DNA from: Octopus bimaculoides
Lineage: Eukaryota
DNA length: 64,000 nucleotides
Direction of reading: 5' to 3'
Assembly (NCBI RefSeq): GCF_001194135.2
Contig: NC_068988.1
Span: 72,351,736 to 72,415,735, forward strand
Below, piece after piece: positions 30,201-33,200 of this stretch. Every line of letters starts with the position of its first letter. The first letter of the stretch is position 1. A program made the translations under genes and the position numbers. The notes below the pieces were generated by a model, which was given only the letters and a program-made list of their open reading frames with translations, did not search any database and was not told the origin of the DNA.

Positions 30201-33200
30201 NNNNNNNNNNNNNNNNNNNNNNNNNNNNNNNNNNNNNNNNNNNNNNNNNNNNNNNNNNNNNNNNNNNNNNNNNNNNNNNNNNNNNNNNNNNNNNNNNNNN
30301 NNNNNNNNNNNNNNNNNNNNNNNNNNNNNNNNNNNNNNNNNNNNNNNNNNNNNNNNNNNNNNNNNNNNNNNNNNNNNNNNNNNNNNNNNNNNNNNNNNNN
30401 NNNNNNNNNNNNNNNNNNNNNNNNNNNNNNNNNNNNNNNNNNNNNNNNNNNNNNNNNNNNNNNNNNNNNNNNNNNNNNNNNNNNNNNNNNNNNNNNNNNN
30501 NNNNNNNNNNNNNNNNTAAGTCGTGGGGTCGATTTATTCGACTAAAACCCTTCGAGGTGGTGCTTCAACACGGCCGCAGTCAAATGACTGATACAAGTAA
30601 AAGAATAAAAGAATAAAAGAATATATATGCTATCTTTATGTTAGTTAAAATATGTTTGTGACATATTTCAACTTCAGTTACCGTCCGTTGATCGGATCAA
30701 CTGGAACCCTCGACGTCGTAAGTGACGGAGTGCCAACAACAACAGTAAGATGGTATAAAAATAAAATATTTATCCAATGCTGCCCTCTGTAGAATTCCCA
30801 GACGCGTTTCTAGTTCATTAGCCGCTATTAATGGGAAGTACCTGGACAGACTTTATTAAAGAGGCAACTCTGGACAGACTTAATTAAAGCCGTAGCTTCA
30901 ACTAGAACACAGTCAACAACATCGACTCGTGTGAGCCATTCGATCGCCAGGTCTGAAAATTTTTTGTGTGCGCGCGTGCGCGCGTGAGTGTTTTGAAGAA
31001 GGACCAGTGTCTGTGTCCTTCGCAGACTCTCCTCTCCTAGACCGGTGAGATTGATTCTCTTGAACATTTCTAAGTCAACATTTACCGGAAAGATGAGAGA
31101 TTTAGAAAACTGATTTTCTAGGACAGAAGGATTGAGTATGGTCATTGGTGCTGAACCTGGAGGTTAGTGAAAAGAGGAGAGGTGTGAAGGACGGGGATAC
31201 ATAAATGGAGTTGACATGTGTCCATGCAGTACCGAGGTACAGAGGCCATTATAGTAGCGGGAGAGAAGTTAGAGACAGGGGACAGTGCAACTGTGGGTAA
31301 GACAGTGGAGTGGGATTAGGAATGACTTCATGCCGATTAGTAAGTTGACAGTTTTCCAGATGCAGTCTAGGATGTCTGTACAGCAACAACACTACCCTAG
31401 ATGTAAGACCAAAACAGCAAAGTTAGTGGAAATCCTTTTGGCAAGGTTCCGAAGGCATCGACCTAAGTTTGAAAGGTGGACTCGCTGGAGGGCTATACAC
31501 TGTCGAAGTCGTCTTTTGCGATTCGGTTAAATATCTTGTAGATGTTCGATTGTTGGGTAAGCTCTACCCATTTTGTGAGTGGGTGAGTTTCGCCACATAT
31601 TGTAAACTTGGCTTTTGCCTGAATACCTTCAGCACAGCTATCATTGCACCACTTGGAAAATGTACGATATTGGACTTCCGTTGAGTGGGGTATCCGCAGG
31701 AATATGACTAAAAGGATAGCTTCAGTTACCCGCCTAGCTCTTCTAATGGAGCACACATACTGCCAGGAATGAAGCACACATACTTCCAGGGCTACTTGAC
31801 ATAAAACTAGCAAAGATCCGAATGTAGAACAAAAAGCAATACCGCGATACGCAACAAAATTGGAGCAGATTTCAACTCATAATCCATGAGTATGTGGTCT
31901 AATATATTACCTACTCGGTCATTTGGTTTTATACATAAAGCATCATTAGAATGGAAAGGAGAAATATATGCAATAAAGTCCACTTGGAATTTACTAAATC
32001 TACAATTGCAAGTTGAAGCATATTCTCATATAAATGTATAATATATATAATATTAAATCTCTGAACGAGGTATTAACAGTAACTGCACGATAAAGTGAAG
32101 TATATTTGCCACTTAAATGTGGCTGACCCCGAGGGGTGGATGTTACTGTTGCTTTTAGCCCCAGGAGGACATCTCCTCCAGCTGGCTATCGACACACATC
32201 TGTGCCCTGTCTGTATTTGCCAAGGGAAGTTATCTTTCCCATCTTGATCTACGATACGTACGTACCCGAGTTTCAGGGTTATCTCCCTTCTTCAGCGTAC
32301 GACAATCGCCGACCTTCGATGCAAAAGACATCCCTTGGCAAATATATGTAACTTTCTCCAGTGAAATTATTCACTGATATCGAAAAAGTGAAAACAAGCA
32401 ATGTTAAATCTCTGAACGAGGTATTAACAGTAACTGCACGATAAAGTGAAGTATATTNNNNNNNNNNNNNNNNNNNNNNNNNNNNNNNNNNNNNNNNNNN
32501 NNNNNNNNNNNNNNNNNNNNNNNNNNNNNNNNNNNNNNNNNNNNNNNNNNNNNNNNNNNNNNNNNNNNNNNNNNNNNNATACAGACAGGGCACAGATGTG
32601 TGTCGATAGCTAGCTGGTGGAGATGTCCTCCTGGGACTAAAAGCAACAGTAACATCCACCCCTCGGGGTCAGCCACATTTAAGTGGCAAATATACTTCAC
32701 TTTATCGTGCAGTTACTGTTAATACCTCGTTCAGAGATTTAACATTGCTTGTTTTCACTTTTTCGATATCAGTGAATAATTTCACTGGAGAAAGTTACAT
32801 ATATTTGCCAAGGGATGTCTTTTGCATCGAAGGTCGGCGATTGTCGTACGCTGAAGAAGGGAAATAACCCTGAAACTCGGGTACGTACATATCGTAGATC
32901 AAGATGGGAAAGATAACTTCCCTTGGCAAATACAGACAGGGCACAGATGTGTGTCGATAGCTAGCTGGTGGAGATGTCCTCCTGGGACTAAAAGCAACAG
33001 TAACATCCACCCCTCGGGGTCAGCCACATTTAAGTGGCAAATATACTTCACTTTATATATAATATTGTTTTAGACATAAAAACTATACATACACATTTAA
33101 TTCTGGTACAGCTATTAATTCCAGAGGAATCATCAGCCGTTTGATGTTGTCACTGGGATGTTTCTCTTCAGATTGTGTCATTACTTCTCCATCCACAACA

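What the first reader, a model, noticed from the sequence alone, without database searches (positions are those of the whole stretch)
32053..33055. Retrozyme-like 351-bp tandem repeat carrying an intact minimal type I hammerhead ribozyme
Seen: a non-coding unit with a 351-bp period. Each complete copy contains stem I (gtacg/cgtac, extendable with cgat/atcg), CUGAAGA, stem II (aggg/ccct), GAAAC-UCGG-GUA. Stem III ACUCGGGU is fully self-complementary with two G-U pairs. The ribozyme sits inside a longer stem closed by a 14-bp inverted repeat (tatttgccaaggga / tcccttggcaaata). Extra hairpins are present (cagtgaa-ttcactg, gccac-gtggc). Established: metazoan non-LTR retrozymes and satellites (newt satellite 2, Schistosoma Sm-alpha, cnidarian and mussel retrozymes) are tandem units of a few hundred bp with minimal type I hammerheads that cleave as dimers and give monomeric or circular RNAs. 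Inference: this is a cephalopod retrozyme family that is young (arms about 98-99% identical) and probably mobilised by Penelope-like RT. I cannot tell whether it has been described.
Basis: partly seen in the sequence, partly recalled or inferred. Interest (0 to 1): 0.92.

Follow-up and report, generated by a model that had tools for sequence, protein, structure and literature searches.

The report
Hammerhead retrozyme inserted as inverted pair
A roughly 1-kb piece of non-coding mobile DNA carrying a small self-cutting RNA motif (a hammerhead ribozyme) sits in an intron of an integrin gene as two mirror-image partial copies, a known kind of element whose layout here looks like the work of Penelope-type copying enzymes.

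Summary
The sequence is real but is not a simple tandem array. Window 32049/32053-33056 holds two arms of one 351-bp non-coding unit in opposite orientation around the N gap. The left arm (to 32457) has 1.17 units on the minus strand. The right arm (32579-33056) has 1.36 units on the plus strand. The arms are 98.6% identical. Each arm has one complete type I hammerhead motif: helix I 6 bp, CUGAAGA, helix II 4 bp, GAAA, helix III 2 bp with a palindromic loop, GUA cleavage site. A descriptor scan expects 0.04 such motifs per window by chance. Rfam finds no hammerhead, but it also misses a textbook minimal motif used as control. The unit RNA is highly self-paired (z = -7.3). The borders are sharp and flanked by an 8-13-bp target-site duplication. 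Both outer ends are element 3' ends, and the left one is 37-41 bp longer. Partial tandem, head-to-head inverted copy, a 30-40-bp "tail" and an assembly break are the published signature of Penelope-like element (PLE) insertions. I read it as a daughter insertion of a non-LTR retrozyme, probably made by PLE machinery, in an octopus-like genome. Self-cleavage, copy number and gap content are untested. It is a new member of a known kind.

The parts
32042..32054 (.). Left copy of the target-site duplication. The maximal match is TATATATAATATT and the certain core is ATATAATA at 32045-32052. Its last bases overlap the element end (microhomology).
   Evidence: Read directly. A 13-bp exact direct repeat sits at both borders. 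P(>=13 bp) is 2e-4 for random position pairs and 5e-3 for AT-rich pairs.
32053..32089 (-). One-sided 'tail'. These are 37 nt (41 if 32049-32052 are counted, with one mismatch) by which the left arm's 3' end runs further into the unit (offsets 127-163) than the right arm's 3' end.
   Evidence: BLAST register: 32090 corresponds to 33056. Similarity does not extend beyond the border.
32053..32457 (-). Left arm, 1.17 units of the 351-bp element on the minus strand. Its 3' end is at the left border and its 5' side runs into the gap.
   Evidence: 98.6% identical to the reverse complement of the right arm.
32257..32301 (-). Hammerhead motif of the left arm: helix I 6 bp (CGUACG/CGUACG), CUGAAGA, helix II AGGG/CCCU with loop AGAUAA, GAAAC-UCGG-GUA. 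Predicted cleavage is between 32273 and 32272 on the minus strand.
   Evidence: Descriptor scan; sequence.
32458..32578 (.). Assembly gap (121 N, length estimated) at the head-to-head junction of the two arms. The left contig stops at unit offset 110 and the right contig starts at offset 0.
   Evidence: Both contig ends fall next to copies of an internally repeated GGCAAATA word of the unit (read).
32579..33056 (+). Right arm, one full unit (32579-32929) plus 127 bp of a second (32930-33056, 100% identical to 32579-32705). Its 3' end is at the right border, at unit offset 127.
32846..32888 (+). Hammerhead motif of the right arm: helix I 5 bp plus a C.A mismatch at 2.6/1.6, CUGAAGA, helix II AGGG/CCCU with loop AAAUAA, GAAAC-UCGG-GUA. 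Predicted cleavage is after 32883.
32803..32932 (+). Long imperfect stem enclosing the hammerhead.
   Evidence: ViennaRNA fold of the 351-nt monomer: -121.9 kcal/mol circular, z = -7.3 against 200 dinucleotide shuffles.
33054..33066 (.). Right copy of the target-site duplication (TATATATAATATT). Its first 3 bases overlap the element end.

Best explanation
This is one retrotransposed daughter copy of a non-autonomous, non-coding 351-nt element of the metazoan non-LTR retrozyme kind. It lies in an intron of an integrin alpha gene of an octopus-like genome.

Inferred life cycle of the family, from the published retrozyme model:
- Tandem master copies are transcribed.
- The type I hammerhead has a 2-bp helix III and a near-palindromic ACUCGGGU. 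It pairs with a second copy to form an extended helix III and cuts after GUA.
- This releases a 351-nt, highly self-paired RNA that can be circularised by a host ligase.
- That RNA is then copied round and round by a reverse transcriptase supplied in trans.

This locus records the integration step:
- The target TATATATAATATT was nicked on both strands with a stagger.
- Each 3' end primed cDNA synthesis on multimeric or circular element RNA, so both outer borders are element 3' ends.
- The two cDNAs meet head-to-head in the middle, where the assembly breaks.
- The two start sites lie 37-41 nt apart in the unit (offsets 127 and 164-168). This matches the two internal RT start sites, the 'tail', that are peculiar to Penelope-like elements.

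As assembled, each strand carries only one hammerhead, so this copy is most likely an inert offspring and not a source of circular RNA.

Shown: the anatomy, the motif, the TSD, the tail length and the RNA self-pairing. Inferred: self-cleavage, the dimer mode, the circular RNA and the PLE enzyme. My separate estimates are about 0.8 that it is a retrozyme-type element with a genuine hammerhead, about 0.55 that a PLE made the insertion, and about 0.85 that the inverted arrangement is real. The overall confidence of 0.6 is for the statement as a whole.
For: - Inverted arms with partial tandems at 98.6% identity.
- A complete hammerhead descriptor match. Chance expectation is 0.04 per window (about 2e-4 for one 351-bp unit, scaled by length) and 0/100 shuffles at the observed helix lengths.
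- Helix sizes of 6/4/2 bp with a small palindromic loop 3 equal the published definition of canonical metazoan type I hammerheads that act as dimers (PMC4209133).
- Unit length, GC of 42.7%, absence of an ORF and strong self-pairing (z = -7.3) match retrozymes (PMC7229834).
- Sharp borders and a 13-bp TSD, P = 2e-4 to 5e-3.
- PLE insertions are described as a partial tandem plus an adjacent inverted 5'-truncated copy plus a 30-40-bp tail at one end, and as a cause of short-read assembly problems (PMC8557442).
- A purified PLE protein nicks and extends both strands and starts RT at two internal sites that delimit the tail (PMC11167929).
- Pairs of PLE-type hammerheads 100-700 bp apart on opposite strands were noted in Schistosoma. 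Here they are about 590 bp apart.
- The same window holds a decayed PLE at 60020-61264, with the RT C-terminal half, a CxxC linker and GIY-YIG. Its best hit is 6e-135.
- Integrin exons run in N-to-C order on the minus strand across the region, so the scaffold is collinear.
Against: - No Rfam hammerhead model matches, even at E<=10 on 81-nt slices. A textbook minimal motif from metagenome locus L010 also reaches only 16.3 bits and no Hammerhead_1 hit, so this negative result is weak.
- Helix II closes with A10.1-U11.1 instead of the usual G-C (my own knowledge), which may lower activity.
- The minimum-energy fold of the isolated motif is an alternative pairing of CUGA with UCGG, not the active fold.
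- Only two near-identical copies are available, so there is no covariation or conservation evidence.
- No other copy was found in the window, in three cephalopod or related PLE loci, in 5.8 billion proteins through six-frame ORFs or in metagenomes.
- The unit has no detectable similarity to the PLE remnant in the window.
- The centre of the structure is unread.
- The tail match rests on one locus. Two random ends in a 351-nt circle would differ by 30-45 nt about 9% of the time (my own estimate, not a tool result).
- Microhomology with the AT-rich target at both ends could by itself explain where cDNA synthesis started.
Confidence: 0.6

Rival explanations
1. The inverted arrangement is a scaffolding or assembly artefact. 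The real locus would be a plain partial tandem or monomer, or the 1.9-kb left contig (30517-32457) belongs to another copy of the family or is flipped.
For: The window is a gap-rich short-read scaffold with 14 N runs. The junction of the arms is exactly the unread gap. The left contig has no exon that fixes its orientation. Both contig ends fall at an internally repeated word of the unit.
Against: The two arms differ at 5 positions, so they are not one contig used twice. The unique flanks of both contigs carry the same 13-bp direct repeat exactly at the element borders in the orientation expected for one insertion, P = 2e-4 to 5e-3. A flipped or foreign contig would not give that. A break at the centre of an inverted repeat is what the literature predicts for real PLE-type insertions in short-read assemblies.
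Confidence: 0.12
2. The element is a genuine hammerhead retrozyme copy, but the insertion was made by a LINE-type enzyme through twin priming (or by another RT), not by a Penelope-like element. The 37-41-nt offset of the two ends would only reflect where the AT-rich target overhangs found microhomology in the RNA.
For: Twin priming of LINE-1 (own knowledge: Ostertag & Kazazian 2001) also yields an inverted 5' part, a direct 3' part and a TSD. There is microhomology at both junctions: TAT on the right, and AATATT against AACATT on the left. The unit has no sequence similarity to the PLE remnant in the window or to three PLE loci.
Against: Neither outer end has a poly(A) or simple-repeat tail. 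[quoted passage not shown] Retrozymes co-occur with PLEs and resemble their pLTRs in vertebrates (bioRxiv 10.64898/2026.07.22.740005).
Confidence: 0.17
3. The hammerhead-like motif is a chance or dead look-alike inside an ordinary short non-autonomous repeat or foldback element. No RNA self-cleavage takes place.
For: No Rfam hammerhead hit. A-U at 10.1/11.1. The active fold is not the minimum-energy fold. PLE-type minimal hammerheads cleave poorly in vitro. The right-arm copy already has a helix I mismatch.
Against: Chance expectation for the full descriptor is 0.04 per window and about 2e-4 per unit (scaled by length). The motif sits where retrozymes and pLTRs carry it, inside a long self-paired stem in a 351-bp tandem-forming unit. 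The Rfam negative is uninformative, because a textbook minimal motif also fails.
Confidence: 0.12

Closest known systems
Metazoan non-LTR retrozymes (Cervera & de la Pena 2020, PMC7229834), especially the Mytilus galloprovincialis repeats of about 350-390 bp
   Same: A non-coding unit of a few hundred bp (351), low GC (42.7%), tandem-forming, one type I hammerhead per unit, highly self-paired RNA, a TSD longer than 4 bp, and co-residence with PLEs in the genome.
   Different: Here there are under 2 units per arm and the two arms are inverted, so this is not a multimeric array. No expression or circular RNA data exist. No sequence similarity to a described family could be tested. Helix II closes with A-U.
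Penelope-like element insertions (pLTR partial tandems with an inverted 5'-truncated copy and a 30-40-bp tail; PMC8557442, PMC11167929) and their hammerheads (PMC4209133)
   Same: Partial tandem, a head-to-head inverted copy, a one-sided 37-41-bp extension, a variable-length TSD in a TA-rich target, a hammerhead in the repeated part, and an assembly break at the inverted junction. Opposite-strand hammerhead pairs 100-700 bp apart have been reported.
   Different: There is no RT/EN ORF between the repeats, and the whole unit is 351 bp. The hammerhead has the canonical 6/4/2 helix sizes, not the long-helix-II, helix-III-less minimal PLE type. No similarity to a PLE pLTR was found.
Newt satellite 2 and Schistosoma Sm-alpha hammerhead repeats
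   Same: A type I hammerhead with a 4-bp helix II, a 6-nt A-rich loop 2 and a very short helix III that requires two copies to form an extended helix III (PMC6155905; loop details are from my own knowledge).
   Different: Those are long satellite arrays or SINE-like repeats with proven self-cleavage. This is a single dispersed insertion with untested activity.
LINE-1 twin-priming inversions
   Same: An inverted 5' part joined to a direct 3' part, flanked by a TSD, with both outer ends being cDNA start points.
   Different: There is no poly(A). The template is a tandem or circular ribozyme-bearing RNA. The offset between the two ends equals the PLE tail length.

Membership tests
Type I hammerhead ribozyme (canonical metazoan form) | Catalytic core in the right order: C3-U4-G5-A6-N7-G8-A9, G12-A13-A14, an A15.1-U16.1 pair and H17 at the cleavage site | tested here: met
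   CUGAAGA ... GAAA C ... G UA in both copies. Chance expectation is 0.04 per window.
Type I hammerhead ribozyme (canonical metazoan form) | Open helix I of about 6 bp, helix II of about 4 bp, and helix III of 1-2 bp capped by a small palindromic loop (PMC4209133) | tested here: met
   Helix I is 6 bp (left copy) or 5 bp plus a mismatch (right copy). Helix II is 4 bp with a 6-nt loop. Helix III is 2 bp with loop UCGG. ACUCGGGU self-pairs as 8 bp with two G-U pairs, -10.9 kcal/mol for the 13-mer duplex.
Type I hammerhead ribozyme (canonical metazoan form) | Usual G10.1-C11.1 closing pair of helix II (frequent, not strictly defining; own knowledge) | tested here: not met
   A-U at this position in both copies. 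An alternative reading has an extra unpaired A, as in PLE and CChMVd hammerheads, but it leaves an unpaired U before G12.
Type I hammerhead ribozyme (canonical metazoan form) | Match to a curated covariance model (Rfam Hammerhead_1 or its clan) | tested here: inconclusive
   No hit at the gathering threshold or at E<=10. A textbook minimal motif with the same helix III (L010) also gets only 16.3 bits against Hammerhead_3 and nothing against Hammerhead_1.
Type I hammerhead ribozyme (canonical metazoan form) | Site-specific self-cleavage | not testable with these tools
   Needs in vitro transcription of monomer and dimer.
Type I hammerhead ribozyme (canonical metazoan form) | Core conserved and helices covarying among copies | tested here: inconclusive
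   Only two copies at 98.6% identity. Their motif differences are one loop 2 base and one helix I base that breaks a pair.
Non-LTR retrozyme | Tandem repeats of 150-450 bp, each carrying a type I hammerhead. An 'active' retrozyme has the hammerhead in all its repeats. | tested here: inconclusive
   The 351-bp period is seen within each arm, but only 1.17 and 1.36 units are present and there is one hammerhead per arm. This fits a monomer-type derivative, not an active array.
Non-LTR retrozyme | Non-coding, GC below 45-50%, no LTR/PBS/PPT, TSD longer than 4 bp when present | tested here: met
   The longest frame is 85 codons. GC is 42.7%. The TSD is 8-13 bp. PBS and PPT were not specifically scanned.
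Non-LTR retrozyme | Highly self-paired unit-length RNA | tested here: met
   -121.9 kcal/mol and z = -7.3 for the plus polarity, z = -5.3 for the minus polarity.
Non-LTR retrozyme | Multicopy in the genome and expressed as linear or circular RNA | not testable with these tools
   The source genome is not searchable here. Indirect routes found nothing.
PLE-mobilised (non-autonomous Penelope-like) insertion | A partial tandem (pLTR-like) plus an adjacent inverted 5'-truncated copy | tested here: met
   subject to the unread junction at 32458-32578.
PLE-mobilised (non-autonomous Penelope-like) insertion | An optional 30-40-bp tail at one end, corresponding to two RT start sites | tested here: met
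   The left arm's 3' end lies 37-41 nt beyond the right arm's 3' end in unit coordinates. This is a single locus, so it is suggestive only.
PLE-mobilised (non-autonomous Penelope-like) insertion | Sequence similarity to the pLTR or 3' end of an autonomous PLE of the same genome | tested here: inconclusive
   No similarity to the decayed PLE at 60020-61264 or to PLE loci L001-L003. That is a sample of four loci only.

The most novel reading that the evidence does not exclude
The locus is a molecular fossil of the integration step of an animal retrozyme. It would show that retrozyme RNA is inserted by Penelope-like RT/EN through priming on both target strands from the two PLE-specific internal start sites (inverted arms plus a 37-41-bp tail). 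The two retrozyme papers I read argue for this link only from co-occurrence and pLTR similarity and do not mention inverted copies or a tail. It would also be the first retrozyme family described in a cephalopod.
Probability: 0.4. Interest if true: 0.6.

Novelty: new member of a known kind. Interest (0 to 1): 0.4.

Why it matters
Retrozymes are abundant sources of small circular RNAs in animals, but how they are copied back into DNA is inferred, not shown. A young insertion with intact borders, a TSD, inverted arms and a tail-length offset gives a concrete prediction. The 3' ends of copies should be bimodal, about 40 nt apart, and head-to-head pairs should be frequent. One genome-wide survey could test this and so tie retrozymes mechanistically to Penelope-like elements. 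None of the papers found here describes a cephalopod retrozyme, although 235 Rfam hammerhead hits were counted in the giant squid genome (PMC6962438). Practically, such inverted insertions explain some gaps in short-read assemblies. When transcribed within an intron they would also form dsRNA hairpins of about 400 bp. That may matter in animals with heavy A-to-I editing, though this last point is speculation.

Tried and rejected
- Rfam at gathering thresholds on the whole window, and at E<=10 on the locus and on 81-nt slices around each motif, gave no ribozyme family on either strand, only a spurious SCARNA7 hit.
- TRF found no array, because each arm has fewer than 2 units.
- I looked for more copies in several ways. 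A relaxed blastn of the unit against the window found only the two arms; the weak hits near 55.3-55.7 kb are not repeats.
- A concatenate of the unit's six-frame ORFs against 5.8 billion proteins gave nothing.
- An exact hammerhead pattern gave 0 hits in metagenomes.
Only one (L010) had the full topology.
- I looked for an orthologous empty site or population data through the neighbouring integrin exon. It had no protein relatives and no exact-product contigs.
- PLE loci from O. bimaculoides, Argonauta hians and an ENA assembly have no hammerhead and no similarity to the unit.
- A minimal hammerhead core scan of the window found nothing near the PLE remnants.
- An apparent extension of the left arm to 31968 under lax scoring is not significant, P = 0.27. 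The borders are therefore sharp.
I replaced it with stop-to-stop ORFs.
- I did not build a covariance model, because two 98.6%-identical copies carry no covariation.
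Full report
WHAT IS THERE

Reading 31500-33700 and self-BLAST show that the finding's interval is not one head-to-tail array. The gap 32458-32578 (121 N) separates two arms of the same 351-bp sequence in opposite orientation.
- The right arm (32579-33056) carries the unit on the + strand. 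It has one full unit (32579-32929) followed by 127 bp (32930-33056) that are 100% identical to 32579-32705.
- The left arm (32049/32053-32457) carries the unit on the minus strand. Region 32400-32457 repeats 32049-32106 with one mismatch.
- Between the arms, 368 bp align at 98.6%, with 5 mismatches.

The scan's program asked for a test of continuity across the gap. The answer is that the letters on the two sides are not continuous on one strand. The left contig ends at unit offset 110 running downward, and the right contig starts at unit offset 0 running upward. The 351-bp period is supported by only 58 + 127 bp of within-arm overlap, and TRF reports nothing.

THE HAMMERHEAD

A descriptor scan required CUGANGA, helix II of at least 3 bp, GAAA, helix III of at least 2 bp, a UH site and helix I of at least 4 bp. 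It finds exactly two hits in the 64 kb, one per arm and on opposite strands: + 32846-32888 and - 32301-32257. The sequence is CGUACG-CUGAAGA-AGGG-AAAUAA-CCCU-GAAAC-UCGG-GUA^CGUACG.
- The left copy has a 6-bp helix I.
- The right copy has an A at 1.6 (a C.A mismatch) and a different loop 2 base.
- One hundred dinucleotide shuffles of the window give 0.04 hits per window with the loose descriptor and none with the observed helix lengths. Scaled to the length of one unit, that is roughly 2e-4.

Helix I of 6 bp, helix II of 4 bp, and helix III of 1-2 bp with a 2-4-nt palindromic loop is how Cervera & de la Pena 2014 define the canonical metazoan type I hammerhead that needs a second copy to form an extended helix III (PMC4209133). 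ACUCGGGU can self-pair over 8 bp.

Caveats:
- No Rfam family matches at gathering thresholds or at E<=10, even on 81-nt slices.
- As a control, a textbook minimal motif with the same GAAAC-UCGG-GUA, found in metagenome locus L010, reaches only 16.3 bits against Hammerhead_3 (gathering score 48.5) and nothing against Hammerhead_1. The Rfam negative therefore says little.
- Helix II closes with A-U, where the consensus as I know it is G10.1-C11.1.
- The minimum-energy fold of the isolated motif pairs CUGA with UCGG instead of forming the active fold.
- With two near-identical copies there is no covariation evidence.

THE UNIT

The unit has no reading frame longer than 85 codons in a trimer and a GC of 42.7%. 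The 351-nt RNA delimited by the cleavage site folds to -121.9 kcal/mol as a circle. That gives z = -7.3 for the plus polarity and -5.3 for the minus polarity against 200 dinucleotide shuffles. These are the properties listed for metazoan non-LTR retrozymes, including the 350-390-bp mussel repeats (PMC7229834).

BORDERS AND INSERTION ANATOMY

Similarity to the unit stops sharply on both sides. The borders carry a direct repeat, TATATATAATATT, at 32042-32054 and 33054-33066. Its certain core is ATATAATA, and its ends overlap the element by microhomology. A match of 13 bp or more at such positions occurs in 2e-4 of random position pairs and in 5e-3 of AT-rich pairs in this window.

Both outer borders are 3' ends of the element. 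The right arm ends at unit offset 127 and the left arm at offset 164-168, so the left arm is 37-41 nt longer (32053-32089). The 5' sides meet head-to-head in the gap.

This combination is the published signature of Penelope-like element insertions:
- a partial tandem;
- an adjacent inverted 5'-truncated copy;
- a 30-40-bp 'tail' at one end only;
- trouble for short-read assemblers (PMC8557442).

A purified PLE protein nicks and extends both target strands and starts reverse transcription at two internal sites that delimit the tail (PMC11167929). Pairs of PLE-type hammerheads 100-700 bp apart on opposite strands were already noted in Schistosoma. Here the two are about 590 bp apart. The two retrozyme papers I checked do not mention inverted copies or tails. 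They argue for PLE mobilisation from co-occurrence and pLTR similarity.

CONTEXT

The element lies in an intron of an integrin alpha gene on the minus strand. The exons are:
- FG-GAP exons at 44492-44665 and 39680-39892;
- an Ig-like 2 exon at 33083-33589 (Pfam E = 2e-14), whose ORF ends 27 bp from the insertion;
- a weak Ig-like 3 match at 29043-29363.

The N-to-C order shows that the scaffold is collinear across the region. The 1.9-kb left contig has no exon of its own, and its orientation is supported by the TSD.

The window also holds a decayed PLE at 60020-61264. It has the RT C-terminal half, a CxxC linker and GIY-YIG spread over three frames. It has 84 relatives, the best at 6e-135, and the named ones come from Octopus bimaculoides, Argonauta hians and Mytilus coruscus. 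The window shares 11 interspersed-repeat matches (76-97% identity) with an O. bimaculoides locus, and none with an Argonauta or an ENA locus. An octopus-like origin is therefore plausible but not proven.

INTERPRETATION

The best reading is a young daughter insertion of a retrozyme-type element, integrated by target-primed reverse transcription on both strands, probably by PLE machinery. As assembled, each strand has a single hammerhead. This copy therefore cannot release a unit-length RNA and is probably inert. In the host pre-mRNA the two arms would pair into a hairpin of about 400 bp, which would also sequester the sense hammerhead (inference).

Rivals:
- a scaffolding artefact, countered by the 5 arm differences and the TSD;
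- LINE-type twin priming with microhomology-driven starts, which cannot be excluded from one locus;
- a chance or dead hammerhead look-alike, countered by the shuffle statistics and the context.

WHAT COULD NOT BE DONE

The source genome and other cephalopod genomes are not searchable as DNA with these tools. Indirect routes failed. Copy number, conservation of the core, the gap content and all RNA-level claims remain open.

NOVELTY

Retrozymes are known to be widespread in invertebrates, molluscs included. Rfam-type hammerheads have been counted in a squid genome, with 235 hits (PMC6962438). This is a new member of a known kind. Its modest added value is the PLE-type insertion anatomy.

Noticed in passing
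window 60020-61264 (+): Decayed Penelope-like element, 3' part: RT C-terminal half, a CRRPNCGTCPYL (CxxC) linker and a GIY-YIG endonuclease spread over three reading frames. The stitched translation has 84 relatives, the best at 6e-135. Named ones come from Octopus bimaculoides, Argonauta hians and Mytilus coruscus. No hammerhead was found next to it.
   Followed up: partly
window 21291-21647 (+) and 108-437 (-): Two further short ORFs have cysteine-rich and GIY-YIG-like motifs that look like other PLE endonuclease remnants. Neither has a Pfam hit at E<=0.01.
   Followed up: no
window 29043-44665 (-): Integrin alpha gene on the minus strand, with FG-GAP, Ig-like 2 and weak Ig-like 3 exons in N-to-C order. 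The retrozyme insertion lies only 27 bp beyond the end of the Ig-like 2 exon's open reading frame, which puts it near that exon's likely splice donor. The exon found no relatives in the 5.8-billion protein set.
   Followed up: partly
window 62831-63008 and 7 other places (e.g. 4197-4363, 59906-60079, 1391-1529, 1186-1317, 26543-26661, 39946-40041, 7309-7399): A SINE-like interspersed repeat with 8 copies at 81-88% identity. It translates to the recurring '...RGYSRRHLPKVPRSG.EPGT...' ORF fragments. ARAGORN calls no tRNA.
   Followed up: partly
window 6241-6666 (+) and 63576-63830 (+): Mariner/Tc1-type transposase fragments. The first has a Pfam Transposase_1 hit at 3e-8. The second was recognised by eye.
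   Followed up: no
window 32159, 32257, 32283 vs the right arm: Three of the five differences between the arms are G in the left-arm copy where the right-arm copy has A, in sense-RNA terms. This is too few to interpret. If seen genome-wide it could point to A-to-I editing of the RNA template.
   Followed up: no
window 32845-32889 and 32256-32302: The repeated GUAC register lets CGUAC pair with GUACG (covering the GUA site) and CUGA with UCGG. This alternative fold is more stable than the active hammerhead. It could keep monomers uncut, as proposed for viroid hammerheads, or it could simply mean low activity.
   Followed up: partly
L010 1607-1645 (+) (metagenome contig Ga0126342_10093962): A textbook minimal type I hammerhead, CUGU-CUGAUGA-GUGC-GUGA-GCAC-GAAAC-UCGG-GUA-ACAG, with the same helix III as the window's motif. 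It is not in a tandem repeat. It may be a chance match, or host DNA in a metagenome.
   Followed up: partly
window 31745-31790: A 23-bp tandem duplication (2 copies, 91% matches) about 260 bp left of the insertion.
   Followed up: no
window, 14 N runs (e.g. 22164-22608, 23613-24321, 36988-37717): Most gaps are flanked by (AT)n, (GT)n or (CT)n microsatellites, typical of a short-read scaffold. The gap at 32458-32578 differs in being flanked by the two arms of an inverted repeat.
   Followed up: no
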